A stretch of 64,000 nt of DNA from positions 62,001-126,000 of the IMG/VR virus record IMGVR_UViG_3300042879_006196; one strand, given 5' to 3'. Of this stretch, positions 1-24,262 are shown piece by piece. A program made the translations under genes and the position numbers. Below the pieces are notes generated by a model. That model was given only the letters and a program-made list of their open reading frames with translations, searched no databases and was not told the DNA's origin. Numbering within the stretch: the first letter of the stretch is position 1; each line of letters begins with the position of its first letter.

Positions 1-99
1 CGAGAATTGCTCGCTGTTGCCAGAGAAGGTGGCTCAATCGGCACCTTTTACAATACAAGGCTTCGACCCTTGCCTATAACAAAGTCAGATTCTTTCTGA
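1..99 (+). CDS. 3' end of a KTSC-like small protein, paralog of 5836..6093
   Basis: Frame 1 reads RELLAVAREGGSIGTFYNTRLRPLPITKSDSF*, which matches SELLTVATEGGSLGTFYNSVVRKLPIEK in 5836..6093. Confidence 0.7.
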   Translation, partial: RELLAVAREGGSIGTFYNTRLRPLPITKSDSF

Positions 100-102
100 A
101 TG

Positions 103-125
103 ATAGGGGAATAAAATCCCCTATC
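103..125 (+). terminator. Hairpin GATAGGGG...CCCCTATC after the KTSC-like gene
   Basis: Inverted repeat; a related TAGGGGA-TAAAT-TCCCCTA hairpin occurs twice at about 6100-6175, after the paralog. Confidence 0.5.
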
Positions 126-165
126 TAAAATTTTCCAGGTTTAACAAAACCTGATTATAATGAAT

Positions 166-307
166 GTAAGAACGAAAGTTCTACAAGGTGACGACTCTGC
201 ACCTTGAGGGGAACGGAATTGCCCCTTGAAACCAGTAGCTCCTGTCAAATGGAGTGACGACATCTATTAAGTGCTTTGGGAATAGTTTCTAGAAAGAGGC
301 TATTCCC
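166..307 (+). ncRNA. Candidate structured ncRNA occupying a promoter cassette
   Basis: Starts at the ATG-equivalent position after TATAAT(156-161), has no ORF at that position, and folds into five consecutive hairpins. Confidence 0.55.
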
Positions 308-330
308 CCTCCAAGAGCCCCGCCGCCCGC

Positions 331-366
331 TTTTTCCAGGTTTAACACAATCTGATTATAATAGAT
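331..366 (+). promoter_or_regulatory. Representative early sigma70-type promoter for a leaderless transcript
   Basis: TTTCCA-N18-TATAAT-AGAT-ATG; no room for a Shine-Dalgarno; internal dyad CAG(G)TT-N6-AA(T/C)CTG. Confidence 0.8.
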
Positions 367-765
367 ATGACATTAGAACAACTGCAACAAATCTTTCCAG
401 GTGCTACGGCTGATACTTGGCATCAGCACCCAAACGGTGGTGGATGGGTGCAAAATACTGCAAAGGTATATGAAACTGCTTGGGTTGGCAAAGATGCCGT
501 AGTGTATGGGGATGCTGTGGTGCTTTGGAATTCTTCTATATCGGGGAATGCTAGGGTGTTGGCTGACGGGTATGGGTCTGGAGGAGAAGAAATGACCTTA
601 GAAAAAGCGTTGGAGCGGATTGAGTTCCTTGAGAACGCTCTGAACGGAGCGATTGGTTCCTGCATTAAGGATGAGGAATGTGATTTCACGAAAAAGCCAG
701 AACTGGTGGAATACATTAAGCAAAACTGGTTGAATGCATTAATCAAAGAAATAGATAATGAATAA
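367..765 (+). CDS. Hexapeptide-repeat-like protein fused to a second small protein (internal start at 592)
   Basis: WHQHPNGGGWV...VYETAWVGKDAVVYGDAVV pattern; GGAGGAG precedes ATG 592, whose peptide duplicates the 758 ORF. Confidence 0.75.
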   Translation: MTLEQLQQIFPGATADTWHQHPNGGGWVQNTAKVYETAWVGKDAVVYGDAVVLWNSSISGNARVLADGYGSGGEEMTLEKALERIEFLENALNGAIGSCIKDEECDFTKKPELVEYIKQNWLNALIKEIDNE

Positions 766-964
766 CATGACATTAGAAGAGGCATTGAAACGGATTGAGT
801 TCCTTGAGAACGCTTTAGACCAAGCCATTGACTTGGCAGTAATCCGAACTTGGGATTTAGGATATATTGTAGCAGGTTATGGTGGTGATAATGCAACTTA
901 TGACGTTAGAGAGCCACAAAGAGCTTTTCCTGCTCTAGTGGAATACTTGGAGGGGAAGGAGTGA
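758..964 (+). CDS. Hypothetical cassette protein
   Basis: ORF overlapping the previous stop; N-terminus paralogous to the 592 peptide. Confidence 0.7.
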   Translation: MNNMTLEEALKRIEFLENALDQAIDLAVIRTWDLGYIVAGYGGDNATYDVREPQRAFPALVEYLEGKE

Positions 965-1029
965 AAACCCCCTCCAAGAGTTTCGCTGCCCGCTTTTTCC
1001 AGGTTTAACACAATCTGATTATAATAGAT

Positions 1030-1248
1030 GTGATGTTACCTTACGAATATCTCAACGAAGTGCTTCAAAAGGGCGTTTGCCCAAATTGCAACAAGCCCAG
1101 CAAGTCTATTGACTTCCAATTCTCATATGGCGTGTACGCTGGTGTGATGTGCACTAAATGTGCCATCAATGGCTACAGAGACTCCTGCGGTCACAAGCGA
1201 CCAATGGGCACTAGAGCCGAGTACGAGTCCTTTGGAGAGGATTATTAA
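1030..1248 (+). CDS. Small Cys-rich (zinc-binding) cassette protein
   Basis: GTG at the cassette start position; CPNC and CTKC motifs. Confidence 0.75.
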   Translation: MMLPYEYLNEVLQKGVCPNCNKPSKSIDFQFSYGVYAGVMCTKCAINGYRDSCGHKRPMGTRAEYESFGEDY

Positions 1249-1311
1249 TCCCCCTCCAAAGGGGCGGCAGATCGTTTTTTCCAGGTTTAACACAATCTGA
1301 TTATAATAGAT

Positions 1312-1515
1312 ATGAGCAGTGATACAAAAGAATCGTTGGTTGTACTATCTCTCCTCGGAGGATTTGTTCCGTTGGTCTTTGCAATAGTGTGTCTCCCCAA
1401 GTATACGGAAGCCTCACTTTATTGGCTGAAGTTCGCCATGACCGCTTCAATTGTGTGTCCCGCAGTTGGATTTACAATTGACAGAGTGTGGAGAAAAGTC
1501 ACAAAAAATGACTAG
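1312..1515 (+). CDS. Small two-TM membrane protein
   Basis: Leaderless cassette ATG; two hydrophobic segments. Confidence 0.75.
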   Translation: MSSDTKESLVVLSLLGGFVPLVFAIVCLPKYTEASLYWLKFAMTASIVCPAVGFTIDRVWRKVTKND

Positions 1516-1723
1516 CATCTATGAAGAACTCAAAAACGCTGGTGTGGAAATCTCCAACTGGCAAAGTGACCTTTATTGTCCAAAAAATGCCCAGACTATC
1601 CCAATAGTCAAAAAGTATGAAAAAGAACACTATATTTCTACTTTCAAAAACTTAAACGACGGTCTCACTTGGTATGATGTTGCTTTTGCTTACGACCCTT
1701 ACTGGTCAAAATTAGGAAAGTAA
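1508..1723 (+). CDS. Hypothetical cassette protein (likely start MTSIYEE)
   Basis: ATG 1508 overlaps the previous gene end; part of ORF 1451..1723. Confidence 0.7.
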   Translation: MTSIYEELKNAGVEISNWQSDLYCPKNAQTIPIVKKYEKEHYISTFKNLNDGLTWYDVAFAYDPYWSKLGK

Positions 1724-1786
1724 TTCCCCTCCAAGGGGGCGGCAGACCATTTTTTCCAGGTTTAACACAATCTGATTATAATAAAT

Positions 1787-1981
1787 ATGAGCAATAAAAA
1801 GGCTTCAATCAAAAAACGAATAACAATGAATGGCAAAACATCAATTGTTGAAATAGATGTCTTCCAGCCCACTGGACATATGTCTTACTCAGGATTCGGT
1901 GCTCATGGAAGACAAAATCGAAAATCCGAGCGTCGCCAAAATCGAGCTGAAGCTCGCAACGTAATGAGAGGTGCATTTTAA
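1787..1981 (+). CDS. Small very basic protein
   Basis: Leaderless cassette ATG; GFGAHG followed by an Arg-rich tail. Confidence 0.75.
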   Translation: MSNKKASIKKRITMNGKTSIVEIDVFQPTGHMSYSGFGAHGRQNRKSERRQNRAEARNVMRGAF

Positions 1982-2106
1982 TGATTGACCCAAATGAATA
2001 CAAAGATGACTCTATATCTTTTGATGACGGTTCTCAATTAATTCTGCCCGACATAGAAATTTCTGATGATAATTGGGCATTTGGCACTCTAGATGTTGAA
2101 ACTTGA
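1981..2106 (+). CDS. 41-aa highly acidic peptide
   Basis: TAATG coupling with the previous gene; MIDPNEYKDDSISFDDGSQLILPDIEISDDNWAFGTLDVET (12 D/E, 1 K). Confidence 0.55.
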   Translation: MIDPNEYKDDSISFDDGSQLILPDIEISDDNWAFGTLDVET

Positions 2107-2127
2107 TGTATAATACTACAGTTCAGC

Positions 2128-2200
2128 CTCTCCATAGCTCAGTGGATAGAGCAACTGCCTTCTAAGCAGTAGGTCGGAGGTTCGAGTCCTCTTGGGGAGG
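2128..2200 (+). tRNA. tRNA-Arg(UCU), no encoded CCA
   Basis: Acceptor CTCTCCA/TGGGGAG, D arm GCTC, anticodon arm ACTGC-CTTCTAA-GCAGT, T arm GGAGG-TTCGAGT-CCTCT. Confidence 0.95.
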
Positions 2201-2271
2201 CTGAGCAATCCCCCTCCAAGAGGGTGGCAGCCCGTTTTTTCCAGGTTTAACATTTCCTGATTATAATAGAT

Positions 2272-2373
2272 ATGGAGTTACTAAAAAACATAGTGGTTGT
2301 TCTTGAAGCATTAGCAGCCATTGGGATTTTCATCGTTCTTGCTAAGATTTGGAAGCAAAACAGCAATCGCTAA
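2272..2373 (+). CDS. 33-aa single-TM peptide
   Basis: Leaderless cassette ATG; MELLKNIVVVLEALAAIGIFIVLAKIWKQNSNR. Confidence 0.7.
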   Translation: MELLKNIVVVLEALAAIGIFIVLAKIWKQNSNR

Positions 2374-2386
2374 ATCGCCACTTCCC

Positions 2387-2412
2387 CAGCTCCCCTCGAT
2401 TGAGGGGAGCTG
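2387..2412 (+). terminator. Perfect 11-bp hairpin
   Basis: CAGCTCCCCTC-GATT-GAGGGGAGCTG. Confidence 0.55.
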
Positions 2413-2477
2413 TTCCCCCTCCAAAGGCTTCGCCGCCCGCTTTTTCCAGGTTTAACACAATCTGATTATAATAGATA

Positions 2478-2735
2478 TTGAAAGTGATAGAAAAAACAAA
2501 GAAAGAAACAATAAAGTCTAGGAAAAAATATACAATTAATTATATTCAAGACCTTGGTAATCTTACTTTTATTGTTGAAGAAAAATTCAGTAGCTTAAAA
2601 AAAGCTATTGAGAGGGTGCAAGAAAAAGAAGCATTTTGGATACAAGAGTGTTTTGATGAAGATTTAGGAATATTTGAGCTCAAGCCCCGAATCGCTGGAG
2701 AGCTTGAATTACGATATTCTCTCAGATTTGAGTAA
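2478..2735 (+). CDS. Hypothetical cassette protein
   Basis: TTG start 1 nt from the canonical cassette start position. Confidence 0.65.
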   Translation: MKVIEKTKKETIKSRKKYTINYIQDLGNLTFIVEEKFSSLKKAIERVQEKEAFWIQECFDEDLGIFELKPRIAGELELRYSLRFE

Positions 2736-2811
2736 CACTCTGAAACTTAACCCCTCCAAAGGCTTCGCCGCCCGCTTTTTCCAGGTTTAACACAATCTGA
2801 TTATAATAAAT

Positions 2812-3231
2812 ATGACACTGAAAGATTTTGAGAAAGAGCTTCGCGTAAAAGTTTTAGCAACTTGGGGAACTGTTATAAAGCCTGCAAACTATGGAAAGTT
2901 TACAGATATTAAAGTGAGAGTTTCTTCAGGTGATGAGTTGTTTATTGTTGAAGTTAACTGGGAACATGATGAAAAGTGCTTCAATAAGTATGCTGATTTC
3001 ACAGGCGAATATTCAACGGATGTAATGCTCGATGAAACTGATATTTATGCTTCAGGGTGTTTTGCTCAATTCAAAATACATAGAAAAAGAAGAACTTTTG
3101 AAATAGGTTTAGTAGGCGAGCATTTTAATGATTTTGAATACTTAGGTTTCAAAAATCTAAAGTATGGAGTGCAATTGTATTTCGAAAATAGACAAGCTCT
3201 AGGTTCTTTCAGAGAATTTAGTGATGTTTAA
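2812..3231 (+). CDS. Hypothetical cassette protein
   Basis: Leaderless ATG; ORF fills the cassette exactly. Confidence 0.8.
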   Translation: MTLKDFEKELRVKVLATWGTVIKPANYGKFTDIKVRVSSGDELFIVEVNWEHDEKCFNKYADFTGEYSTDVMLDETDIYASGCFAQFKIHRKRRTFEIGLVGEHFNDFEYLGFKNLKYGVQLYFENRQALGSFREFSDV

Positions 3232-3292
3232 CCCCTCCAAAGGGGAGGCAGATCGTGTTTTCCAGGTTTAACACAATCTGATTATAATAGAT

Positions 3293-3490
3293 ATGAGCAA
3301 CGTGTTTGAACAAAGATTCTACAATGGTCAGGGTAATACATCAATTGAAAAATGCCGATACTTTGGAGAGTCTCATGCTTCTTATGAATGGCATAGACAA
3401 CTTGACCCAAGATGGACAGATGAACAGCAAAAAGCATATCATGAAGGCTATGATATGGTTCTTGAGGAATTGAAGAGAAACAAAAATTAA
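3293..3490 (+). CDS. Hypothetical cassette protein
   Basis: Leaderless ATG; ORF fills the cassette; AYHEGY-type C-terminus. Confidence 0.8.
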   Translation: MSNVFEQRFYNGQGNTSIEKCRYFGESHASYEWHRQLDPRWTDEQQKAYHEGYDMVLEELKRNKN

Positions 3491-3554
3491 ATCCCCCTCC
3501 AAGGGGGCGGCAGATCGTGTTTTCCAGGTTTAACATTTTCGAATTATAATAGAT

Positions 3555-3890
3555 ATGACACCAAGAGAAATTAAAAAGTTGATTGAGCGAATGGCAACTA
3601 ATGGTTTTACCTTAGTAGATGGATTCTTTCACCGACACATATACACTGGTAGAAAGTTGTATAGTGACGTGGTTAAGTTTGAGGATGCCTTGAATTGGCT
3701 CGAAAAGCCTGTTCTCACTGAAAGAATAAGAGACGAAGATATTATGGTGTTTATAAAAAATTATGGCAACGATGTAGCCGCTCGCTATGATGGTTGTTTA
3801 ATTTATGCGTCTATTAGTGGCTTTCGTGACAAAAGACTCACAGATGAACAAGTGGACGCCATTCATAAACAATGGCTTAAGTTACGCTGA
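3555..3890 (+). CDS. Hypothetical cassette protein
   Basis: Leaderless ATG; ORF fills the cassette. Confidence 0.8.
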   Translation: MTPREIKKLIERMATNGFTLVDGFFHRHIYTGRKLYSDVVKFEDALNWLEKPVLTERIRDEDIMVFIKNYGNDVAARYDGCLIYASISGFRDKRLTDEQVDAIHKQWLKLR

Positions 3891-3954
3891 TTTCCCCTCC
3901 AAAGGGGCGGCAGATCGTGTTTTCCAGGTTTAACACAATCTGATTATAATAGAT

Positions 3955-4581
3955 ATGATTCAATACAAGCAGTCGCAAAAACTAAAGAAGCTTCAATTGG
4001 AAAAGAACTTTGCAGAAGCAAACTGGCAAGAAGTTGAAGCGGAATGTAAAATCATCGACTCAGAAAATTCGGCGTTGCATAAAGAGAAATCTCAAGAACT
4101 TCAAAATCATATCAAAGCTATTGAATCTATTTGCAATCTGACTAAAGCCCAAAGTAAATACTTGAATGGATTCTATGCTCCAATCGTTTATACAAGAGAA
4201 GTTGATACTCTGCAAAGAATAAAAAGCAACTACGAAGGCATAATCAAGGAAAAAGAAAAACAAGAAATGTTGGCTAAACAGCAAGAATATCAAGCTAATT
4301 TGCAACAAAAAGCAATTATCTTTTTACTTGAAAATGGTAAAGTTCTTGGACAAGATTTTACTTTGGAAAATGCAATAAATTCTGCTAATAAATTGAAGTT
4401 TAAGCAACTAATTAAAGAGAAACTAGAAAGTTCAAGTGAATTCTCTTTTGACGGTGAAACTTGTGATGAAGATTGTGGTTGGGATGGTATGGGTCACAGA
4501 TGTTTCTGTGGTTGCCGAAGAGTAGATTGGGAATATAACGGCAATTTTGACAATATGTATATTTATGCCCAAGCATACTAA
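3955..4581 (+). CDS. Coiled-coil protein with C-terminal Cys cluster
   Basis: Leaderless ATG; CDEDCGWDG..RCFCGCRRV. Confidence 0.8.
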   Translation: MIQYKQSQKLKKLQLEKNFAEANWQEVEAECKIIDSENSALHKEKSQELQNHIKAIESICNLTKAQSKYLNGFYAPIVYTREVDTLQRIKSNYEGIIKEKEKQEMLAKQQEYQANLQQKAIIFLLENGKVLGQDFTLENAINSANKLKFKQLIKEKLESSSEFSFDGETCDEDCGWDGMGHRCFCGCRRVDWEYNGNFDNMYIYAQAY

Positions 4582-4643
4582 CCCCCTCCAAAGGGGAGGC
4601 AGATTGTTTTTTCCAGGTTTAACACAATCTGATTATAATAGAT

Positions 4644-4814
4644 ATGAGCGACAAAGAATTGAAGCTGATGATTGCTGGACAATGCCTCACGGGGTTGCTT
4701 GCAAATAATTCTCCTTGGAATAACGAATTAAGCCGACCAGCGCTTGTAGACTTTGCTTGGGGGGTTGCAACAGCTTTAATGGAGTTAAGTAAAGAGGAAG
4801 AGGAGAAGAAATGA
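4644..4814 (+). CDS. 56-aa phage protein of the AGQALxGLLAN...A..LM type
   Basis: Leaderless ATG; IAGQCLTGLLAN...AWGVATALM; ATGA overlap with the next gene. Confidence 0.7.
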   Translation: MSDKELKLMIAGQCLTGLLANNSPWNNELSRPALVDFAWGVATALMELSKEEEEKK

Positions 4815-5059
4815 CGCTAAGAGAGTGCATCAAACAAGAACTTAACTATCCCCGTAAAATGCATGGAAGTATTGTTGTTTACCGTGTAAGGCGGGATGGG
4901 GCAACTACATACACCTGTGCGGAGTGGGCTTTGCTTGAAAACAGACCACCCGTTGCAGAAATTTGGCGGGATTGGGGGAACAAAGAATGGCAAGTAAGTT
5001 ATTATAGAAAGCCAACAAAGCAAGAAAAAAAGGTGATAGATGCCTTTAGTTGTTTGTAG
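4811..5059 (+). CDS. Hypothetical cassette protein
   Basis: GAGGAG SD and ATGA coupling. Confidence 0.75.
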   Translation: MTLRECIKQELNYPRKMHGSIVVYRVRRDGATTYTCAEWALLENRPPVAEIWRDWGNKEWQVSYYRKPTKQEKKVIDAFSCL

Positions 5060-5202
5060 GGGAAGGATTAAGTCCCTCCCCCTCCAAGAGGGTGGCAGCC
5101 CGTTTTTTCCAGGTTTAACATTTTCTGATTATAATAATTATTTACAAATTTTTTTTCAAAAAATATTTTTTCCAGGTTTAACATTTTCTGATTATAATAG
5201 AT

Positions 5203-5637
5203 GTGATACACATTCACGCAACCAATCTAGGAGTCAGGTTTGGAACCTCTGACACTACTCTCGTTACTGCAAAAGACTATGATTGGGACTTCCAATTGTC
5301 TACCGAAGCCACTTCCAACGATAAGGACGTTATCGTGTTAAAAATGCCCGAAAACATGGCATTGGAACTATTCTGGGAATACTGCCGTAAAGAAGCATCG
5401 AGCCACCTTCTTTTGCACATTAGTGCTCTATTAGACGAAACTCCAAAAGAGCACATTGTTGAACAACTCCGTTGGTCAGTTGAAATACTGACTGATGATA
5501 GAAATAACAAAGTATTTGGGCGGGTAATCAAGCGTTCCGAGGCGTACATGGCAAAAGATATTGAGAATTTGCTTTTCTATAATCAAGAGCTTAAACTTTA
5601 TGCTCTATTGGATGAGGCTTATTTTTTCCAGGTTTAA
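5203..5637 (+). CDS. Hypothetical cassette protein
   Basis: GTG at the cassette start position; the stop lies inside the next promoter copy. Confidence 0.75.
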   Translation: MIHIHATNLGVRFGTSDTTLVTAKDYDWDFQLSTEATSNDKDVIVLKMPENMALELFWEYCRKEASSHLLLHISALLDETPKEHIVEQLRWSVEILTDDRNNKVFGRVIKRSEAYMAKDIENLLFYNQELKLYALLDEAYFFQV

Positions 5638-5835
5638 CATTTCCTGATTATAATAATTGCCATAGAAAAAAACTATGGCAATTATATCTAGTTTGCAAAA
5701 ATCTATGACAAATTTTCCAGGTTTAACAAAACCTGATTATAATATAGTTGCAAAAAATTAAAAAATTTTTTGGCGGCGGAGCCTTTGGAGGGGAAAAAAA
5801 TTTTCCAGGTTTAACATTTTCTGATTATAATAGAT

Positions 5836-6093
5836 ATGGTTAAGAACCATAAAATCAAAAAAAGCAAAGGCAAGGTAACCATCCTCCCTGAAGCTTCTTT
5901 CGTCGAACGACTTGAACTGAAAGGCAATAACCTGAAGTTCAAAATGAAATCAGGTGATAGCGTATATTCTACCGTTTTGAATCCTGAAAACATTTCAGAA
6001 TTGCTTACCGTAGCAACCGAAGGCGGTAGCCTTGGCACTTTTTATAATTCCGTTGTAAGGAAGTTGCCGATAGAAAAGGTAGCAACCTTCTAG
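5836..6093 (+). CDS. KTSC-like small protein
   Basis: Leaderless ATG; ELL.VA..GGS.GTFYN..VR resembles the KTSC C-terminal motif. Confidence 0.55.
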   Translation: MVKNHKIKKSKGKVTILPEASFVERLELKGNNLKFKMKSGDSVYSTVLNPENISELLTVATEGGSLGTFYNSVVRKLPIEKVATF

Positions 6094-6385
6094 ACAATTT
6101 AGGGGATAAATTCCCCTATTCCATTTTTTCCAGTTTTAACAAATTCTAGACAGAATAGGGGATAAATTCCCCTATTCCATTTTTTCCAGGTTTAACACAA
6201 TCTGAATTATAATGTATATACAGATTGTGGGGTGGGGTTTTTATTTTGCTATAGATAGCGAAAGGGGCACCTTTTTTTATTTTCAGATTGTGTCGTAGCC
6301 TATATATAGGGAGGGGGGGGAGGTTTTTCTCACACAATCTGACCCCCCCTTCTTTTTTCTAGGCCCCTCGTTTACACCGACACTA

Positions 6386-6503
6386 CACAATCTAAAAACC
6401 ACAATCTGAGAATCACAATCTAAAAACCACAATCTAAAAACCACAATCTAAAAATCACAATCTAAAAACCACAATCTGAGAATCACAATCTGAGAATCAC
6501 AAT
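6386..6503 (+). repeat. 14-bp tandem repeat with CACAATCT core, 8 full copies plus 1 partial
   Basis: CACAATCT at 6386, 6400, 6414, 6428, 6442, 6456, 6470 and 6484; partial at 6498. Confidence 0.95.
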
Positions 6504-6858
6504 TTTTTAGTTTATTTTTTTTATTCTCGGATCATAGGGGGGGTGTTTAAATTTAGGGGGGGTGTTTTAAAAAGGGTGTATAGATATATATACATATAGG
6601 GGTAAATTTTCGTATAATTAATAATGGTATACACGATTTTTCTTTTTCTAGCTATATATACAAATCTTTGTTTACTAGAAGCCTTGATACAATACAAAAC
6701 TTTTGTTTCTCGCTTAGGGTCATATTTAATGATTAAATATTTAAATTTCTTATCGTGGTTAAATTTCTTTACATACACAATCTGTCTTTTAAAGGGATCA
6801 CATTTGATAAATTTTTGATTAAAAAATAATTCCAGAAACACTGTTTTATGCATTTCCC

Positions 6859-6891
6859 CGTAATCTAAGAGCACAAGGATTTCGAATATAA
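6859..6891 (+). pseudogene. Remnant C-terminus of a Trp-repeat paralog
   Basis: Reads RNLRAQGFRI*, matching the ends RNLQAQGFPIKIY* and HNLKAQGFPM*. Confidence 0.6.
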
Positions 6892-6909
6892 ATTTAGTAA
6901 TTTAAGATT

Positions 6910-8466
6910 GTGTGGTATAGATATTGCAGATTAATTATAGCTGGCAAAGAACATATAATTAAAAAGATCATTGGTTATTTTAGAGAACAAGGGATTGGAC
7001 AAGTTGACTTAGATAATCTCCAACACAATCTGAATACCTTAGATAAGAATAATTTATTACCAGCGAGAATAGAACCTAGAAAAGATGGTGTATTTTTTGG
7101 TGATAGATTGTATGAAGATTTTTTAGAATTTCAAGAAATAGTGGATGGATTATATGGAGAATATAAATTAAGACAAAAAACAAAAGAACAAAAGAAATTA
7201 AGAGAAGAAAAAATAGAATTTGTTCCAGGTAAAACATCTGTTTATCCATGTAATAGTGTAAATGATGCGATCAAATATGGGGTTGGTACAGATTGGTGTA
7301 TTTCTCAACCTGGTAATGGAAATTATGATTCATATAGATCCGACTATCAATCTACATTTTATTATGTACAAGATAACACTAGACAATCTGATGATCCTTT
7401 ATCTAGAGTAATGGTGGATATACAAGCAAATGGTGTTGTCAAACTCACTGATATAAATAATACCACTGGTACAATAGCTGAATTTGGTACAGATTGGAAA
7501 AAGTATTTCGAGTATTTGGAAAAAAGTGGTGTAGATATTTCTCAATTTGTTAATAAACCTTTGACACAAGAAGAGATAGAAGAAAATAAGTTGATTGGTA
7601 AAGAAATAAATGATTTGGAGAAATTTGAAAAATTACCATTAGAATATAAATTCAAATACATTGGTCGTGGTCATTTATTAACGACAAAACAATTGGAGTC
7701 TATTATTAATCTTCAATCTGTTCATAGCAATGATGTAAAAAATACATTGATAAAACATTATTTAAAAACAGGAAGATCTTTACCAGCAATTCAAAAATTC
7801 ATTTTATTTGAAAGCAATCAAGGATGGAGAACAACATACATAAGAAGTAGAAAAATAGTAATAGATCAAATTAGAAAAAATTTATTGGATGACGACGAAG
7901 TAGCTCGCGAATTTCTAGATGCTGATGAAAGGGCTCTTTATGAAAATCCATTGAAATCAACAAATATTGTTGTGAAAAATATTGAAGATTTTGATTTTTT
8001 ATTAACTAAAGGTGTAAGTTTAAATCAGTTTAATTGGTCTAGTGTTTCTCAGATTCGTAATTTATCTGAAGATTTTATAAGAGAATATAAAGATAAAGTG
8101 GATTGGCTTGATATTTCTACTTATCCAAGATTATCTGAAGATTTTATCAGAGAATTTCAAGATAAGGTGTACTGGTGGATAATTTCTCAATATCAAACAT
8201 TATCTGAAGATTTTATAAGAGAATTTCAAGATAAGGTAAAATGGGGAACAATTTCTTACACACAGGAATTATCTGAAGATTTTATAAGAGAATTTAAAGA
8301 TAAGGTGGATTGGGAGAAAATTTCCAGATATCAAAAATTATCTGAAGATTTTATAAGAGAATTTAAAGATAAGGTGGATTGGTATTATATACGGTGGAAC
8401 GAGAATATTTCCGATGAAACCAAACGCAATCTGCAAGCACAAGGATTTCCTATAAAAATTTACTAA
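6910..8466 (+). CDS. MWY-start protein with KYGxGTxWC domain and 5 C-terminal 23-aa Trp repeats (paralog 1)
   Basis: LSEDFIREFxDKVxWxxISxxQx units at a 69-nt period (8062, 8131, 8200, 8269, 8338). Confidence 0.9.
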   Translation: MWYRYCRLIIAGKEHIIKKIIGYFREQGIGQVDLDNLQHNLNTLDKNNLLPARIEPRKDGVFFGDRLYEDFLEFQEIVDGLYGEYKLRQKTKEQKKLREEKIEFVPGKTSVYPCNSVNDAIKYGVGTDWCISQPGNGNYDSYRSDYQSTFYYVQDNTRQSDDPLSRVMVDIQANGVVKLTDINNTTGTIAEFGTDWKKYFEYLEKSGVDISQFVNKPLTQEEIEENKLIGKEINDLEKFEKLPLEYKFKYIGRGHLLTTKQLESIINLQSVHSNDVKNTLIKHYLKTGRSLPAIQKFILFESNQGWRTTYIRSRKIVIDQIRKNLLDDDEVAREFLDADERALYENPLKSTNIVVKNIEDFDFLLTKGVSLNQFNWSSVSQIRNLSEDFIREYKDKVDWLDISTYPRLSEDFIREFQDKVYWWIISQYQTLSEDFIREFQDKVKWGTISYTQELSEDFIREFKDKVDWEKISRYQKLSEDFIREFKDKVDWYYIRWNENISDETKRNLQAQGFPIKIY

Positions 8467-8504
8467 TTTTTGAACAAATCATATTTTTTATCGTATAATA
8501 ATAA

Positions 8505-8579
8505 TGCGGGGTGGAGCAGAGGTAGCTTGTCTGGCTCATAACCAGAAGGTCGTGGGTTCAAATCCCTCCCCCGCACCCA
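8505..8579 (+). tRNA. tRNA-Met(CAU), initiator-like scaffold, CCA encoded
   Basis: TGCGGGGTGGAGCAG..GGTAGCT.GTCTGG-CTCATAA-CCAGA..GTGGGTTCAAATCCC..CCCCGCA-C-CCA. Confidence 0.9.
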
Positions 8580-8580
8580 A

Positions 8581-8654
8581 GCTCCGATCGTCTAGCGGTT
8601 TAGGACATCGCTCTTTCACGGCGAAGATCACGGGTTCGAATCCCGTTCGGAGTA
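8581..8654 (+). tRNA. tRNA-Glu(UUC), no encoded CCA
   Basis: GCTCCGA/TCGGAGT acceptor; TCGCT-CTTTCAC-GGCGA anticodon arm; ACGGG-TTCGAAT-CCCGT T arm. Confidence 0.93.
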
Positions 8655-8677
8655 ATTAAAAAAGATTGGAATAAAAT

Positions 8678-9424
8678 ATGTATTTACCTTTATTAGCTTT
8701 TTCCCTTTTCACACAATCTACTTTAGATGACACACAATGTAGAAAGGCATTAAATGAAATTCTCCCTATGATGCGCACAACCAATGCTATGAGTTTTAGA
8801 TTAGAGGGGGAGAATGAATACAAGGGGTTTTTTACAAAATATTCGGGCAGTTTTAAATGGTTCAAAAATGAATCTGTGATAAAGTCAGAGTTAAAGTTAT
8901 CGCGAGATCAGATTGGCTTACAAAGAATTGTGGCTGATGGTAAAAAGATTTGGGCACACAATCTGCAAAGAAATGAATATACAGTGGCTCGTTATTCTTT
9001 AGAATTATCTGTGGGCGAAGATTACATGAAAAGATATATAAATGGTGTAAAGTACCCTGTGCTAGGGATGGGGCAACATTTAATGACACTTGCAGATCAG
9101 GTAGGTTTTGTATCACCTTCTCTCAAAGACTGGATTGGTGGTATTGAGTGGCAGGGAAAATTAGAAATAGATAAAAATAATTCTTTAAGAATTGTGAAGA
9201 GAATTTATCAGATTGTGGCTGATTATCGTTATGTGGTTTGGGAGCTTGAATCATTTGATGAGGGTGTCACATTTAATTTTTCAAGCATAAAGATTTACAA
9301 TAAAAGTTTTGATGGGTCAACCACCACCACATATCTTTATTTGGACGATTGTGTGGGTGCGGATCATTTAGGATTTAAATTTGTTCCTCCATCTGGCAGC
9401 AAAGTATTATGGATAAAAGATTGA
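8678..9424 (+). CDS. Secreted LolA/DUF2092-like beta protein
   Basis: Hydrophobic N-terminus; IVADGKKIWAHN...NEYT and C-terminal FKFVPPSGSKV motifs typical of the LolA fold. Confidence 0.6.
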   Translation: MYLPLLAFSLFTQSTLDDTQCRKALNEILPMMRTTNAMSFRLEGENEYKGFFTKYSGSFKWFKNESVIKSELKLSRDQIGLQRIVADGKKIWAHNLQRNEYTVARYSLELSVGEDYMKRYINGVKYPVLGMGQHLMTLADQVGFVSPSLKDWIGGIEWQGKLEIDKNNSLRIVKRIYQIVADYRYVVWELESFDEGVTFNFSSIKIYNKSFDGSTTTTYLYLDDCVGADHLGFKFVPPSGSKVLWIKD

Positions 9425-9460
9425 GAAGGAAGATTTTTTCTCATTCTATAATACTATACT

Positions 9461-9883
9461 ATGAACAAACACAATCTATTAAACAAAATAGCTTCAATTG
9501 CTACAGAACTCGACGTAAAAGGTTTCACAAAGGAAGCAAAGACCTTGGATAATGTGTTAATTAGAGTGGCGGATATTAATCCTGAAGAATATTGGGATAA
9601 AGAATGGAGAAGAGAGTTTCGTGAAGAAGAAAGAACTATTGTTCCAACAAAAAAAGTTTGGGAGTATGTTAAAAGCGCACACACTAAAGAATTAGAATAC
9701 GCACTTGAAGGTGGCGGCTTAGACGTGAAAAATTTTGCTGAATTTTGCTGGTCTTTAAAAGATGAAAATTTAAACAACATGATCAAAAATAGCCCAGATC
9801 TTAATTGGGCATGGTTGGAAGAAGCATTTATAGATCATTTGGAATATATTCAACATTCTAAGTTTGACTCAGAACCAGAATGA
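9461..9883 (+). CDS. Hypothetical protein with shared N-terminal IASxATELD.KG..KEA tag
   Basis: ORF; tag shared with the genes at 9976 and 20778. Confidence 0.8.
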   Translation: MNKHNLLNKIASIATELDVKGFTKEAKTLDNVLIRVADINPEEYWDKEWRREFREEERTIVPTKKVWEYVKSAHTKELEYALEGGGLDVKNFAEFCWSLKDENLNNMIKNSPDLNWAWLEEAFIDHLEYIQHSKFDSEPE

Positions 9884-9975
9884 TTAGGAGGGAGGCTAAT
9901 TTTACGATTAAGCTTCCCCCGAAAAGGTGCGCTTTTTCTAACGTAAATCAATTTTCACATTTAAAGGAGAAAAAA

Positions 9976-10551
9976 ATGAACAAACACAATCTGCTAAAAC
10001 GAATTGCTTCTGTTGCCACAGAGCTTGATATGAAGGGTTTCACTAAGGAAGCAAAACATTTAGATTCTATGCTTTTAAGGTTGGCTATGGATGATGACAT
10101 GCCTGAAATTGAAAAAAGTATTGATAGTGTCACTCCAACTTTTCAAGATTGGGAAGGTTTAAATGCCTTGAATGGTATTTTGATTAGTGTGCTTGGCGGT
10201 CGTAAAGATTTAGACAAAAATTACTATCATGGTGTTGACATTATCATGGATCTTGTTAATGATATTTTCACTGAGTTGAAAAACTTTAATAAATTAAATG
10301 CTAATGAAAATTTTGAACAAAAACAAGATTTGGGCATGGAAATAAAAATGCTTCTTGACACTGTTAGGGATGAGACAAAAGCTTTAATTAAAGAATTTAG
10401 AATTACTTTAGATATGGGTAGGCAAATAATTTTGGATCATGCTTATGATTTAGTGGACAAATTCAAAGATACAATAGATGATTTGTTGGATATGAGCTCT
10501 CTTGACTTTTTACCTAAAAATGATGAACAGTGGCCTGACAAACTGTATTGA
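9976..10551 (+). CDS. Hypothetical protein with shared N-terminal tag (start moved from 9880)
   Basis: AAGGAG SD before ATG 9976; MNKHNLLKRIASVATELDMKG. Confidence 0.8.
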   Translation: MNKHNLLKRIASVATELDMKGFTKEAKHLDSMLLRLAMDDDMPEIEKSIDSVTPTFQDWEGLNALNGILISVLGGRKDLDKNYYHGVDIIMDLVNDIFTELKNFNKLNANENFEQKQDLGMEIKMLLDTVRDETKALIKEFRITLDMGRQIILDHAYDLVDKFKDTIDDLLDMSSLDFLPKNDEQWPDKLY

Positions 10552-10590
10552 TTAAAAGGAAGAGCACCGCGCAAAATTTAAATATAGATT

Positions 10591-22972: not shown

Positions 22973-23035
22973 AGCCCAATATAAACTGAAAAAACATTTA
23001 AAAAAAACAAATGTTTAAAGTTTATGTTGGGCTTT
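22971..23035. terminator. Long interrupted hairpin between convergent genes
   Basis: AAAGCCCAATATAAACT..AAACATTT/AAATGTTT..AGTTTATGTTGGGCTTT. Confidence 0.65.
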
Positions 23036-23039
23036 ACAA

Positions 23040-23399
23040 TTATTTAAGAGTGAGAAGATATTTTAATTGATTAAGTGCGCCAAGCATTTCATCTCTGATG
23101 TTTAAAAGATCTGTATCTTTCTCATTAAGAGCTTGTGGAATTTTGTCTTCAAGCACTTCAATATAAGCATCAATGTTGTCTTTAAAATTATCTGCATAAT
23201 TGAACAAAGTTATGTTAAATTTATCACTTGCCACTGGTCTTTTATATTTGCCGATATGAATTTCCATAAATGAATCAATCAAATCATCTAATGTTTCATA
23301 AGCGTTGCCTAATGCCTTATGTTCTGCATAACTTTCTGTTTGCCAATGGTAAATTCTAAGTTGATTTTGCAACGTAAGAAATAATTCAACTATGCTCAT
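23040..23399 (-). CDS. Ferritin/Dps-like four-helix protein (DUF5856-like)
   Basis: YHWQT.SYAEHKAL...D.F.E and NIRDEML..LN.LKYLLTL motifs. Confidence 0.75.
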   Translation of the reverse strand: MSIVELFLTLQNQLRIYHWQTESYAEHKALGNAYETLDDLIDSFMEIHIGKYKRPVASDKFNITLFNYADNFKDNIDAYIEVLEDKIPQALNEKDTDLLNIRDEMLGALNQLKYLLTLK

Positions 23400-23460
23400 A
23401 CTTATTACTTAAAAAAAAATAGGGCAAAGCCCTATTTTTAATTCTTTTATGAAATAAATT

Positions 23461-24258
23461 TTATTTCAAGACTATCATTTTTTCATGTCCCACTCTCACA
23501 CTTGGATCAACATAACATTTAATTCCTTTTTCTCTTAATTCAAGGAAGAAGCTTGCATCTTCGGAAGAAAAGTCATAAATTTGCCCACCTTTAAGTTCAT
23601 GGAATTGCGGTTTGAAGAATGGATATTCAAAAGATTCATGCACTCCAGATCTGACCATAAGCCAGCCAAAACCAATGTAAACACACTCAAACACTCCATC
23701 ATTCTTTTGAACTTCTGGAAGTTTTGATTTTTTATCCATTTGTTCAAGAGTAAGGAATTGAAAACTGCCATTGTTTTGGAAGTAATCTTCATCCCATTCA
23801 TCCACGCAAGTGGTGTGGTGACCATCTGCCATTAAATAAACGCCAGAAAGCATTTGCATTTGTGGGTTTTTTTGCATTCTTTGAAGAAGTTTGAAAAAAT
23901 CTTCAGGAGAAAATACGATGTCAGAATCAATCCACATAATGTAATCATAAGTAAATTGACCATCGAATGGTTTTTGATTTCTCCCTCTCAATACATGTGC
24001 CCTCAAGCAAGCTGAACGTGCGTAATAAACTACAGGGCTGTAAGCATTACTTAATGCAAATGAGATCCCATTTTGATACATGGCATTGCAAAGATTTGTC
24101 CAACTTTGTAGAAAATTAGCAGTGAATTCTCTACCAGGAATGCAAAAAATTACATTGATGTGTGGTTTTTGACCTGGTAGAGGTTGAGAGGGAGTTTGCT
24201 GTGCATAATTTGATGCGACTTGTGCTTGGTTTGAAACTGAATCAAGTTTAAACTTCAT
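23461..24258 (-). CDS. GT-A fold glycosyltransferase-like protein
   Basis: WIDSD (DXD), GFG, SED and VGHEK motifs. Confidence 0.75.
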   Translation of the reverse strand: MKFKLDSVSNQAQVASNYAQQTPSQPLPGQKPHINVIFCIPGREFTANFLQSWTNLCNAMYQNGISFALSNAYSPVVYYARSACLRAHVLRGRNQKPFDGQFTYDYIMWIDSDIVFSPEDFFKLLQRMQKNPQMQMLSGVYLMADGHHTTCVDEWDEDYFQNNGSFQFLTLEQMDKKSKLPEVQKNDGVFECVYIGFGWLMVRSGVHESFEYPFFKPQFHELKGGQIYDFSSEDASFFLELREKGIKCYVDPSVRVGHEKMIVLK

Positions 24259-24262
24259 AAAG

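What the first reader, a model, noticed from the sequence alone, without database searches (positions are those of the whole stretch)
131..6213. Modular array of self-contained, leaderless gene cassettes built on one repeated promoter unit
Seen: about 19 copies of a 30-60 bp unit. In most copies the previous gene's stop is followed within a few nt by CCCCTCCAA-(GC-rich)-T-tract-CCAGGTTTAACACAATCTGATTATAAT-AGAT, and the next start codon follows immediately. Cargo genes are unrelated to each other and look more GC-rich than the rest of the window. The GC element has two main alleles (GGGGCGGCAG.. and CTTCGCCGCCCGC). Known analogues are the T4-type PeSL promoter cassettes and the SPO1 host-takeover module. 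Inference: this is an integron-like, recombination-driven gene capture and shuffling platform for early host-takeover or anti-defence genes, in which any ORF placed after AGAT is expressed without an RBS.
Basis: partly seen in the sequence, partly recalled or inferred. Interest (0 to 1): 0.85.

Follow-up and report, generated by a model that had tools for sequence, protein, structure and literature searches.

The report
Leaderless promoter cassettes, giant phage
This region is the tail end of a roughly 48-kb stretch of an uncultured freshwater giant phage in which about 67 near-identical promoter units each sit directly against the start codon of a small, mostly unknown gene; related phages differ by whole units, much like the 'PeSL' cassettes of T4-type phages but without ribosome-binding sites.

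Summary
The window has 17 copies of CCAGGTTTAACA-N6-GAnTATAAT (0 expected by chance) plus 2 degenerate ones, all on the + strand and all within 135-6213.

The window is part of a 347-kb IMG/VR phage contig. The array is the 3' end of a series of 67 units spread over about 48 kb.

A typical unit reads: stop codon, a small C4/G4 hairpin, CAG-N4, a T-run, a promoter that matches sigma-70 as TTTCCA-N18-TATAAT, then AGAT and ATG. In 50 of 58 cargo-bearing units the start codon lies 4 nt after TATAAT, with no Shine-Dalgarno sequence. An ArdC homologue aligns from its first residues, so these start codons are real.

Cargo is mostly unrelated ORFans and is richer in GC than the rest of the window. It also includes tRNAs and a conserved small RNA.

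Strains 94-99% identical differ by whole cassettes, and every junction lies inside the unit. More distant relatives keep the architecture but have almost entirely different, partly reordered cargo. No integrase or attC-like site was found.

Best reading: a PeSL-like promoter/stem-loop cassette system in a non-T4 giant phage, turned over by homologous recombination and apparently expressed as leaderless mRNAs. Transcription starts, terminator activity and the polymerase involved are all untested.

The parts
102..125 (+). Hairpin (9-bp stem, 6-nt loop) after the stop codon (window 99) of the preceding cargo gene c49, followed by a T-run. It is a different hairpin type from the CCCCTCC element. 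The same type follows the paralogue c66 at 6100-6118 and 6153-6177.
   Evidence: (-15.3 kcal/mol)
135..312 (+). Unit 50. Promoter at 135-161, with no start codon after it. It drives a structured small RNA of about 145 nt, starting at the G five nt after TATAAT (position 166).
   Evidence: the RNA is conserved in L144 and L149, with three 5' hairpins and 5 compensatory pairs. Rfam has no match.
305..964 (+). Unit 51. GC element of the hairpin-less form, promoter 336-362, ATG at 367. Cargo 367-765 (132 aa) and 758-964 (68 aa), which share an internal repeat.
968..1248 (+). Unit 52. GC element (hairpin-less form), promoter 999-1025, GTG at the same +5 position (1030). Cargo is 72 aa and cysteine-rich.
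1250..1723 (+). Unit 53. C4/G4 hairpin element, promoter 1281-1307, ATG at 1312. Cargo 67 aa, then 71 aa (1508-1723); my loose pattern flagged the second as SD-led.
1727..2201 (+). Unit 54. Hairpin element, promoter 1756-1782, ATG at 1787. Cargo 64 aa and 41 aa, then tRNA-Arg(TCT) at 2128-2201 with its own GTATAAT box at 2108-2114.
2210..2411 (+). Unit 55. Hairpin element, promoter 2241-2267, ATG at 2272. Cargo is a 33-aa hydrophobic peptide, followed by a strong hairpin at 2388-2411.
2415..2735 (+). Unit 56. GC element (hairpin-less form), promoter 2446-2472. The +5 codon is ATT; a TTG one base later opens an 85-aa ORF (2478-2735).
2750..3231 (+). Unit 57. GC element (hairpin-less form), promoter 2781-2807, ATG at 2812. 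Cargo 139 aa, an ORFan.
3232..3490 (+). Unit 58. Hairpin element starts directly at the upstream stop codon. Promoter 3262-3288, ATG at 3293, cargo 65 aa.
3493..3890 (+). Unit 59. Hairpin element, promoter 3524-3550 (spacer variant TTTTCGAA), ATG at 3555, cargo 111 aa.
   Evidence: this exact protein is listed in 97 blocks of the collection; of 14 contigs read, 13 have the same neighbours.
3893..4581 (+). Unit 60. Hairpin element, promoter 3924-3950, ATG at 3955, cargo 208 aa. This is the only window cargo also found in the distant relatives L144 (89% aa) and L145 (83% aa by blastp over the full length), where its neighbours are different.
4582..5059 (+). Unit 61. Hairpin element, promoter 4613-4639, ATG at 4644. 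Cargo 56 aa, then 82 aa, which my loose pattern flagged as SD-led. The whole unit is absent from strain contig L025 and present in L047.
5078..5171 (+). Unit 62. Hairpin element and promoter 5109-5135 followed by only 36 nt of A/T: an empty cassette, possibly a deletion scar.
5172..5637 (+). Unit 63. Promoter 5172-5198 with no GC element upstream, GTG at 5203, cargo 144 aa. Its stop codon lies inside the next promoter, so the ORF is fused to the next unit.
   Evidence: (gap -10)
5628..5804 (+). Units 64 and 65. Promoters 5628-5654 and 5717-5743 with 61-62 nt of non-coding cargo each. There is a 13-bp hairpin at 5653-5685 and an inverted copy of the GC element at 5772-5793.
5805..6093 (+). Unit 66. 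Promoter 5805-5831, ATG at 5836, cargo 85 aa. This protein is 55% identical to c49, whose gene ends at window 99.
6088..6213 (+). End of the array. A 56-bp unit occurs twice: hairpin, T-run and promoter head. The first copy (6126) has no -10 box. The second (6186-6213) carries a 1-nt insertion before TATAAT and has no ORF after it.
6214..6900 (.). Non-coding region that closes the array. It holds AGATTGTG/CACAATCT sites, G- and C-tracts, and 8.4 tandem 14-bp repeats (6386-6503) built on the same 8-mer that fills the promoter spacer. An equivalent region follows the array in L144 (3284-3853).

Best explanation
This is the 3' end of the early-gene hyperplastic region of an uncultured freshwater jumbo phage (347 kb, with a DnaE-type replisome).

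The region is built from about 67 copies of a unit of roughly 63 nt that joins one gene's stop codon to the next gene's start codon. Each unit has four parts:
1. A small C-run/G-run stem-loop.
2. A conserved CAG-N4 followed by a T-run.
3. A promoter of the sigma-70 family, readable as TTTCCA-N18-TATAAT. It has an invariant inner block (GGTTTAACA) and a variable 6-nt spacer that often holds the 8-mer CACAATCT.
4. AGAT followed by the start codon.

Inference: RNA polymerase starts at the purine 5 nt after TATAAT. The most likely enzyme is the host holoenzyme, possibly helped by a phage factor that reads the inner block. Most cargo would then be made as a monocistronic mRNA beginning with AUG, i.e. 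leaderless, so any ORF placed behind a unit is expressed without a ribosome-binding site. Where the cargo is an RNA (a small RNA, or tRNAs), the same start point serves.

Because the units are long, near-identical direct repeats, the phage's own homologous recombination machinery (a UvsX-like recombinase, SbcCD-like nuclease and RecJ are encoded nearby) deletes, inserts and swaps whole cassettes between units. This is the mechanism shown experimentally for PeSL elements of T4-type phages.

Shown here: the anatomy, the fixed start-codon position, the true N-termini, the cassette-level polymorphism with junctions inside units, and conservation of the design across four lineages.

Inferred: promoter activity, the start site, early timing, any terminator role of the hairpin, and the recombination pathway.
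For: Repeat and extent:
- 17 window copies against 0 expected.
- 67 copies with up to 4 mismatches across contig positions 20444-68186, all on one strand and none on the other.
- The consensus scan reads every window unit as TTTCCA-N18-TATAAT, matching 10 of 12 positions.

Leaderless geometry:
- 50 of 58 first ORFs start 4 nt after TATAAT. Start codons are ATG 52, GTG 4, TTG 2.
- An SD core is present in 1 of 50 first genes against 16 of 38 internal genes.
- The ArdC homologue (L004:5707-6582) aligns from residue 6 to residue 10 of PDB 6I89 (E = 8e-44), and Pfam ArdcN matches from residue 4. RlaP matches from residue 2. So these ATGs are the real starts.
- Six of the nine units without a first ORF have a purine at position 5, five of them preceded by T.
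- The conserved small RNA's first helix begins exactly at that position.
- A second promoter-like motif, CGTATAWT, also lies 4-7 nt before some start codons and 6 nt before a tRNA 5' end.

Turnover in strains 94-99% identical:
- They lack units 12+13, 26, 33+34 or 61.
- They carry extra cassettes between units 24/25 and 36/37, and after units 55 and 56.
- One contig joins unit 15 directly to unit 46.
- In every case the upstream gene's 3' end and the downstream ATG are intact, with a single, sometimes chimeric, unit between them.
- The 15-to-46 junction lies at the only two units that share the spacer TTTTCGAG followed by AGGT.

Distant relatives:
- L144, L145 and L148/149 keep hairpin, CAG, T5, CCA..T.T.ACA, N9, TATAAT, AGAT and ATG, each with a lineage-specific consensus.
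- They share only 3 cargo families with this phage, in a different order.

Other support:
- Recombination genes are present in the window.
- The PeSL papers describe the same logic, including polyG/polyC stem-loops and crossovers between the -10 box and ATG.
Against: - There are no transcript data.
- A start 5 nt after the -10 hexamer is shorter than the usual 6-8 nt for bacterial RNA polymerase (my own knowledge). A start at the usual position 7 would fall on the G of ATG and lose the start codon. So either this polymerase or promoter behaves unusually, or the reading is wrong.
- The invariant block GGTTTAACA has no role in a plain sigma-70 promoter, and the polymerase is unidentified. Only 106 of the 347 kb could be read, and not every ORF there was scanned.
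- The stem-loop is weak: -6 to -9 kcal/mol, no better than shuffled sequence. It sits 8-10 nt from the T-run and is missing from the second allele, so a terminator role is doubtful.
- Among contigs with an identical cargo protein, 13 of 14 have the same order. Only 2 of 61 orthologous units show a spacer switch. Recombination is therefore infrequent.
- The variant contigs are metagenome assemblies, so a chimeric join at a repeat cannot be fully excluded. Against that, the same 12+13 deletion appears in two samples, and the exact repeats are only 27-35 bp long.
- Early timing is assumed, not shown.
Confidence: 0.62

Rival explanations
1. Integron-like platform. A dedicated site-specific recombinase captures and excises cassettes at the GC-rich element, which would act like an attC site.
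For: Cassettes are gained and lost as units. The GC element is an imperfect palindrome conserved as a structure across lineages. One copy is inverted (5772-5793).
Against: No integrase or other site-specific recombinase turned up in Pfam/PHROG scans of the larger ORFs of the window and array; the only mobile-element gene is an IS-type transposase 55 kb away. Each cassette has its own promoter. Crossover points differ between events and lie in the promoter part (-10 box to ATG) as well as upstream. One-third of the window's elements have no hairpin.
Confidence: 0.05
2. The units are promoters, but the mRNAs are not leaderless. Either transcription starts elsewhere (for example at the G of ATG, or upstream from an unconventional promoter that uses the CCAGGTTTAACA block), or translation starts on read-through transcripts. 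In that case the A/U-rich GAUUAUAAUAGAU stretch would act as an SD-independent initiation region.
For: The 4-nt distance from the -10 box to ATG is shorter than the usual start-site distance. Most hairpins are poor terminators, so read-through is likely. Many other genes of this phage lack an SD sequence. One unit (no. 19) drives a normal 23-nt leader with AGGAG.
Against: A perfect TATAAT is present in 60+ copies and in all four lineages. AGAT followed by a purine is conserved in six of the nine units without a first ORF. ATG dominates strongly (52 of 58), as expected for 5'-terminal starts. The small RNA's first helix begins at position 5. The L145 lineage has the classical 6-nt distance.
Confidence: 0.2
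3. An ordinary early-gene cluster. The repeats are simply what strong early promoters look like, as in T4, T5 and SPO1. The cassette differences are incidental deletions, with no role as a gene-shuffling system.
For: Many phages place a strong, stereotyped promoter before each early gene. Gene order is stable among near-identical genomes. Most differences between close strains are deletions.
Against: Insertions of new, unrelated cassettes are seen as well as deletions (L061, L062, L031/L027). Cargo content is almost completely replaced at 83-89% protein identity of the one shared gene, while the unit design is kept. Cargo GC and GC3 differ from the rest of the genome. Whether this turnover is 'for' anything cannot be decided from sequence alone.
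Confidence: 0.25
4. The units are read by a phage-encoded polymerase or sigma factor, not the host's primary holoenzyme. The lineage-specific inner block (GGTTTAACA, GGTTTCACA, TCTnTCACA) would be its recognition site.
For: The block is invariant within a genome while the neighbouring 6 nt vary freely, and it changes in step across all copies between lineages. It contains a 5-of-6 match to TTGACA at a distance (9 nt) that a normal sigma-70 cannot use together with this -10 box. Jumbo phages often carry their own polymerases.
Against: The perfect TATAAT and TTTCCA at 18 nt fit a host-type promoter. No polymerase or sigma gene was seen among the ORFs scanned, although 241 kb is unread. Concerted change can also arise from gene conversion alone. 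This rival alters who reads the promoter, not the cassette model.
Confidence: 0.3

Closest known systems
PeSL (promoter-early stem-loop) cassettes of T4-type phages (Arbiol et al. 2010, PMC2839356; Comeau et al. 2014, PMC4122927)
   Same: An intergenic composite made of a G/C-run stem-loop, an A/T-rich stretch and a sigma-70-like early promoter, repeated between small ORFans in a hyperplastic region. Close relatives differ by insertions, deletions and replacements bounded by the units, with crossovers mapped between the -10 box and ATG and elsewhere in the unit.
   Different: PeSLs end with a Shine-Dalgarno sequence before the start codon; here the start codon follows the -10 box by 4 nt and there is no SD. 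The phage has a DnaE-type polymerase, whereas T4-type phages use a different polymerase family (my own knowledge), and is twice the size. The units are far more uniform and dense: 67 in one orientation, often one per gene, with a 27-nt core almost invariant. The stem-loop is weaker and absent from one allele. Mini-circles and promoter/terminator activity have not been tested here.
Clusters of early genes behind stereotyped host-type promoters (SPO1 host-takeover module, T4 and T5 early regions)
   Same: Many short early genes on one strand, each or nearly each with its own strong promoter, and products that mostly target the host. This comparison rests on my own knowledge.
   Different: Genes in those clusters have ordinary leaders and ribosome-binding sites. 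They have not been described as one near-identical 63-nt linker repeated dozens of times.
Leaderless mRNAs (lambda cI from PRM; many genes of Actinobacteria and Deinococcus)
   Same: A -10 box immediately upstream of the start codon, no SD sequence, and a strong preference for AUG.
   Different: In those cases the -10 box ends about 6-7 nt before the start (my own knowledge); here it ends 4 nt before in three lineages and 6 nt before in one. Use as the default for a whole class of phage early genes has not been reported in the transcript maps I could read. phiKZ shows no leaderless phage transcripts (PMC8244752), and AR9 5' UTRs are 26-491 nt (PMC5312081).
Integrons
   Same: An array of single-gene cassettes of unrelated content, gained and lost as units.
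   Different: No integrase, no attI or attC sites, no common promoter. The repeat is itself the promoter, and recombination looks homologous.

Membership tests
PeSL cassettes | Intergenic composite of a stem-loop plus a sigma-70-like promoter, repeated many times | tested here: met
   67 units. All window units score TTTCCA-N18-TATAAT. A C4/G4 stem-loop is present in most units and in all four lineages, but it is weak and absent from the second allele.
PeSL cassettes | Shine-Dalgarno sequence and start codon at the 3' end of the element | tested here: not met
   The start codon is present, but 4 nt after the -10 box. An SD core is found in 1 of 50 first genes.
PeSL cassettes | Located in hyperplastic regions of T4-type phages, between ORFans | tested here: inconclusive
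   ORFan-rich hyperplastic region: yes. T4-type phage: doubtful. The polymerase is DnaE-type and at most about 37% identical to any phage in the collection. However, an rIIB-like gene lies upstream and UvsX-like, clamp and clamp-loader genes are present. No structural genes were seen.
PeSL cassettes | Insertions, deletions and replacements between close relatives are bounded by the elements | tested here: met
   Eight or more events in contigs 94-99% identical, all junctions inside a unit.
PeSL cassettes | Excised mini-circles; measured promoter and terminator activity | not testable with these tools
   Needs inverse PCR or read-level data, and reporter assays.
Integron | Adjacent tyrosine-recombinase integrase (IntI) with an attI site | tested here: not met
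   None among the ORFs scanned with Pfam or PHROGs in the accessible 106 kb. The rest of the genome was not readable.
Integron | Promoterless cassettes ending in attC imperfect inverted repeats, expressed from one common promoter | tested here: not met
   Every cassette has its own promoter. The GC element is a 4-6 bp hairpin, or no hairpin at all.
Leaderless mRNA | Transcript 5' end at, or within a few nt of, the start codon | not testable with these tools
   Only geometry is available: the -10 box ends 4 nt (one lineage 6 nt) before the start codon.
Leaderless mRNA | No SD sequence; AUG strongly preferred | tested here: met
   SD core in 1 of 50 first genes; ATG in 52 of 58.

The most novel reading that the evidence does not exclude
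The phage runs a dedicated leaderless early programme. A polymerase-promoter pair, possibly involving a phage factor that reads the co-evolving GGTTTAACA block, would start 5 nt after the -10 box, exactly on the AUG. Dozens of early genes would then be translated independently of the SD/anti-SD interaction. That could keep them expressed while host translation is being shut down, and would make the 63-nt unit a universal plug-in for any captured ORF, tRNA or small RNA. The 8-mer CACAATCT lies in the spacer, in the terminal iterons and in a second motif class that precedes ORFs. It would be the operator of a phage regulator that switches the whole set off.
Probability: 0.15. Interest if true: 0.8.

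Novelty: new variant of a known kind. Interest (0 to 1): 0.55.

Why it matters
If the start sites are as predicted, three things follow.

- This would be the first phage in which a whole class of several dozen early genes is expressed as leaderless mRNAs from one stereotyped unit. It would also show that PeSL-type promoter cassettes exist outside the T4 group, at much larger scale.
- It gives a compact natural 'promoter plus start codon' part and a ready catalogue of early ORFans to screen for anti-defence and host-takeover functions. An ArdC anti-restriction homologue is already among them.
- The phage is abundant in public freshwater metagenomes: single proteins are indexed in about 100 blocks of the collection. 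Cassette turnover could therefore be followed in natural populations.

If the start sites are ordinary, what remains is a well-documented new example of a known kind of hyperplastic early region.

Tried and rejected
- **Mistyped pattern.** My first pattern had the spacer one base short and found nothing. It was corrected.
- **Known phages.** DNA search of the region hit only the tRNA. The DnaE protein is at most about 37% identical to anything in the phage collection. So there is no cultured relative.
- **Rfam.** A scan of the array found only tRNAs.
- **Host inference.** I tried the IS-type transposase at 61879-63069. The best GTDB hits are 65-69% identical, on short MAG contigs from mixed phyla, which is uninformative.
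- **Reading more of the contig.** Scanning for the second motif AGATTGTGTGGTATA returned mostly chance hits and only pieces already inside the window. I did not walk the remaining 241 kb.
- **Terminator reading of the GC element.** Only one CCCCTCC-type element passes a standard stem-plus-T-run rule; the other + strand hits near units are the ATAGGGGA-type hairpins and the hairpin after unit 64. Folding energies equal those of shuffled sequence. I kept it only as a possibility.
- **SD/anti-SD mimic.** In this genome the hairpin pairs CCUCC with GGAGG. I rejected any functional meaning because the other lineages have plain C4/G4 stems.
- **Inverted repeat around the -35 region.** AGATTGTG ... 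CACAATCT flanks the -35 region in 11 units and could be a promoter hairpin. It is not general, and several of those units are paralogous cassettes.
- **Tandem duplication as the origin of the array.** Rejected: 82 of 94 cargo ORFs are singletons.
- **MITE-like mobile element.** Rejected: all copies share one orientation, all are intergenic, and all lie in one region.
- **Function of window cargo.** Pfam, PHROGs and PDB sequence searches gave nothing significant. I did not predict structures because the alignments would be too shallow (3 clusters).

Full report
**What is in the window**

The corrected pattern CCAGGTTTAACA-N6-GAnTATAAT has 17 matches with up to 2 mismatches. All are on the + strand, all lie between 135 and 5831, and 0 are expected from shuffles. 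A copy with a 1-nt insertion sits at 6186 and a decayed copy at 6126, and the last two share a 56-bp duplication. None occurs in the remaining 58 kb or on the minus strand.

In 12 of the 17 copies a start codon that opens an ORF of 31-208 aa begins exactly 4 nt after TATAAT. The intervening four bases are AGAT, or AAAT in two copies. One further copy has a TTG one base later.

The stop codon of the preceding gene is usually 29-35 nt upstream of the promoter. That gap is filled by CCCCTCCAA(A/G) plus a GC-rich piece and a T-run.

**Where the window comes from, and the true extent**

An exact-pattern scan of IMG/VR found the unit in only one contig, IMGVR_UViG_3300042879_006196 (347,392 bp). The eight loci returned are contiguous, covering contig positions 19547-73207, and L001:2959-14165 is identical to window 1-11207. 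The window is therefore contig 62001-126000.

In the joined 106 kb there are 67 units with up to 4 mismatches, from contig 20444 to 68186. All are on one strand and none on the other. They are densest, about one per gene, from 44 kb onward. The finding's 6 kb is thus the tail of an array of roughly 48 kb.

The rest of the window encodes:
- a bacterial-type replisome: DnaE Pol III alpha, DnaB, a DnaC-like loader, primase, clamp and clamp loader;
- RecJ, an SbcCD-like nuclease and a UvsX-like recombinase;
- ribonucleotide reductase;
- a CCA-adding/poly(A) polymerase-HD fusion;
- an IS-type transposase.

Upstream of the array lie rIIB-like and Mom-like genes. There is no close cultured relative, and the host could not be inferred.

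**Anatomy of the unit**

With 67 copies the consensus is clear. Reading 5' to 3':
- the upstream stop codon;
- (T)CCCC(C)TCC-AAA-GGGGAGG;
- CAG plus 4 nt (ATTG, ATCG, CCCG or ACTG);
- T4-6;
- CCAGGTTTAACA;
- 6 variable nt (CAATCT, TTTCCT, TTTTCT, TAATCT or AAACCT);
- GAT, TATAAT, AGAT, ATG.

The consensus scanner reads each unit as a sigma-70-type promoter, TTTCCA-N18-TATAAT, matching 10 of 12 positions. The block GGTTTAACA then lies in the spacer. It is nevertheless invariant while its 6-nt neighbour is free, and I cannot explain that with a plain host promoter.

The C-run/G-run can form a 4-6 bp hairpin. It is only -6 to -9 kcal/mol, no better than shuffled sequence, and lies 8-10 nt from the T-run. 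Almost none of the CCCCTCC elements pass a standard terminator rule.

What argues that the hairpin matters is comparison. In three more distant lineages the stem is kept as C4-5...G4-5 while the loop changes freely in sequence and length. In some copies extra flanking pairs covary.

**Are the genes leaderless?**

The geometry is very regular:
- 50 of 58 first ORFs start 4 nt after TATAAT; the others start 2, 5, 6 or 7 nt after.
- Start codons are 52 ATG, 4 GTG and 2 TTG.
- An SD core occurs in 1 of 50 first genes, against 16 of 38 second or later genes within cassettes.

The start codons are real. The cargo of unit 17 is an ArdC homologue that aligns from its residue 6 to residue 10 of PDB 6I89 (E = 8e-44). 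Its Pfam ArdcN domain matches from residue 4, and the RlaP domain of unit 24 matches from residue 2.

Of the nine units without a first ORF, six have a purine at position 5 after TATAAT, five of them preceded by T (units 5, 19, 45, 50, 62; unit 23 has A-G). Their cargo varies:
- unit 19 has a normal 23-nt leader with AGGAG;
- unit 23 drives three tRNAs;
- unit 45 has about 400 nt of non-coding sequence;
- unit 50 (window 135) drives a structured RNA of about 145 nt.

The unit-50 RNA is conserved in two other lineages, with 5 compensatory pairs among three sequences. Its first helix starts exactly at that purine.

A different promoter-like motif elsewhere in the window, CGTATAWT, lies 4-7 nt before several start codons (24976-, 28361-, 58607+ and the DnaE gene). 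It also lies 6 nt before the 5' end of tRNA-Met, and once it precedes a normal SD leader. Close apposition of the -10 box and the start codon therefore seems to be a habit of this phage, not only of the array.

Against this, a start 5 nt after the -10 hexamer is shorter than the usual 6-8 nt (my own knowledge). A start at position 7 would lose the AUG. One related lineage (L145) has AGATAT before ATG in its intact units, which is the classical 6-nt distance. I conclude that leaderless or near-leaderless mRNAs are the most likely reading, at about 0.6, but nothing here measures a transcript end.

For comparison, published 5'-end maps report no leaderless phage transcripts in phiKZ and 26-491 nt leaders in AR9.

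**Cargo**

In units 4-67 I called 94 ORFs, of which 82 have no blastp partner among them. There are a few small paralogue groups, including c49/c66 (55% identical), which bracket the window's array.

Recognisable cargo comprises:
- ArdC (anti-restriction);
- an Ogg-like HhH glycosylase;
- an RlaP-type nucleotidyltransferase;
- DUF6745;
- tRNAs;
- the small RNA.

The window's own proteins have no significant Pfam, PHROG-with-function or PDB match.

Cargo coding sequence is richer in GC than the other genes of the window: 0.378 against 0.319, and GC3 0.342 against 0.227 (p about 1e-11 to 1e-13). This fits either foreign origin or a distinct codon regime for early genes.

The metagenome scan returned freshwater contigs 94-99% identical to the array. 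Mapping each inter-promoter segment to the reference shows collinear order with whole-cassette differences:
- units 12+13 are absent from two contigs from different samples (L045, L021);
- in L061, unit 26 is absent, a new 410-bp cassette sits between 24 and 25, and unit 29 is replaced;
- in L062, units 33+34 are absent and a new 400-bp cassette sits between 36 and 37;
- unit 61 (window 4613-5108) is absent from L025 but present in L047;
- new cassettes, one of them tRNA-like, follow units 55 and 56 (L031, L027, L047);
- L010 joins unit 15 directly to unit 46.

At every junction the upstream gene's end and the downstream ATG are intact, with a single unit between them. In L025 that unit carries the upstream element and spacer of unit 61 but the downstream sequence of unit 62, which places the crossover near the -10 box. 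The 15-to-46 junction lies at the only two units that share the rare spacer TTTTCGAG plus AGGT. That is the signature of homologous recombination between the best-matching repeats.

Turnover is not fast. Of 14 contigs carrying an identical copy of the unit-59 protein, 13 have the same neighbours. Orthologous units are as conserved as their flanks (98.6% against 98.8%), and only 2 of 61 show a switch of spacer class.

The 208-aa cargo of unit 60 has homologues at 89% and 83% identity, on a 142-kb contig (L144) and a 4.7-kb contig (L145). A fourth lineage was found by a degenerate pattern (L148/149).

All have the same design, each with its own consensus: CCAGGTTTCACA...GAGTATAAT; CCATCTnTCACAATCTGAAGGTATAAT; CCA(G/T)nTTTCACA...GTATAAT. 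So the copies evolve in concert within a genome.

Of the cargo ORFs in L144 and L145, only the homologues of c60, c46 and c26 are shared with this phage. Their order there is c60, c26, c46, whereas here it is c26, c46, c60.

In L144 the array ends in the same kind of non-coding region as window 6214-6900, with G/C tracts and CACAATCT iterons.

**What it is, and what it is not**

The closest known system is the PeSL cassette of T4-type phages. A PeSL is a polyG/polyC stem-loop, an A/T-rich stretch, a sigma-70-like early promoter, an SD sequence and a start codon, repeated between ORFans in hyperplastic regions. Indels between close phages are bounded by the elements. Crossovers have been mapped, for example, between the -10 box and ATG, and excised mini-circles were shown by inverse PCR.

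This array shares the logic and most of the parts. It differs in five ways:
- it has no SD sequence and places the start codon against the -10 box;
- its uniformity and scale are far greater;
- its stem-loop is weaker;
- its cargo includes RNA genes;
- the phage has a DnaE-type polymerase, not the polymerase family of T4-type phages (the latter is my own knowledge).

It is not integron-like in mechanism. No integrase or attC-type site was found, and every cassette has its own promoter.

**Verdict**

I rate this a new variant of a known kind, with interest 0.55. The regular leaderless geometry and the population-level evidence make it a good experimental target. However, the central functional claims (start site, timing, polymerase, circles) remain untested.

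Noticed in passing
L007:2619-13266 and L005:1-366 (contig 22165-33178): A tandem run of about 58 paralogous ORFs of 50-65 aa with overlapping stop/start codons. Each begins MINTDCV and continues with a four-residue periodicity (xxQV)n. Every copy carries AGATTGTG at its 5' end. They lie behind two weak copies of the promoter unit. It is unclear whether these are real proteins or a DNA-level repeat of binding sites.
   Followed up: partly
whole 106 kb; window 6222, 6285, 6333, 6386-6491 and many gene starts: The 8-mer CACAATCT/AGATTGTG occurs 185 times against about 2.7 expected. It fills the spacer of 28 of the 67 promoter units and lies inverted just upstream of the T-run in 11. In 3 units it sits in the spacer in the opposite orientation. 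It also forms the 14-bp iterons at 6386-6503. It is probably the site of a DNA-binding regulator.
   Followed up: partly
window 6905, 10586, 12896 (+); 18479, 19447 (-): A second conserved motif, AGATTGTGTGGTA(T/C)A(G/A)(A/G), preceded by A/T-rich sequence. It sits at the 5' end of five ORFs, whose listed GTG 'start' is simply the end of the motif. It is possibly a second promoter class.
   Followed up: partly
window 8492, 24988(-), 28374(-), 42669, 58592, 27374(-) and others: A third motif, CGTATA(A/T)T, occurs 12 times. It lies 4-7 nt before start codons, including the DnaE gene (whose real start is probably the ATG at 42684), and 6 nt before the 5' end of tRNA-Met. Once it precedes a normal AGGAGG leader.
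   Followed up: partly
window 166-312; L144:2102-2285; L149:1496-1650: A conserved structured small RNA with no Rfam family. It has three 5' hairpins and 5 compensatory pairs among three lineages. Two other units (contig 59992 and 46757) begin with the same GTAAGA.
   Followed up: partly
window 6910-8466, 10591-12891, 12901-14598: Three paralogous large proteins (518, 766 and 565 aa) containing arrays of 69-nt (23-aa) repeats. They match only PHROGs of unknown function.
   Followed up: no
L004:5707-6582 (contig 45135-46010): The cargo of unit 17 is a full-length ArdC homologue (ArdC-N plus zincin metallopeptidase; E = 8e-44 to PDB 6I89). It is a known anti-restriction protein family.
   Followed up: yes
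window 61879-63069 (-): An IS-type transposase (PHROG 506, E = 2.5e-128) inside the phage genome. Its nearest GTDB matches are 65-69% identical, on short MAG contigs from mixed phyla, which may themselves be phage fragments.
   Followed up: partly
window 15823-18474 (-): An 883-aa protein that combines a poly(A) polymerase/CCA-adding head domain with an HD domain. It is conserved next to the array in the 142-kb relative.
   Followed up: no
L229:1-9730 (upstream of the array in a 174-kb contig): Genes upstream of the first unit include a RyR-domain protein, a Mom-like protein, a T4 rIIB-like protein and a 679-713 aa HATPase_c_3 protein. Single cargo proteins are indexed in about 100-120 blocks of the collection, and contigs reach 356 kb, so the phage is common in public freshwater data.
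   Followed up: no
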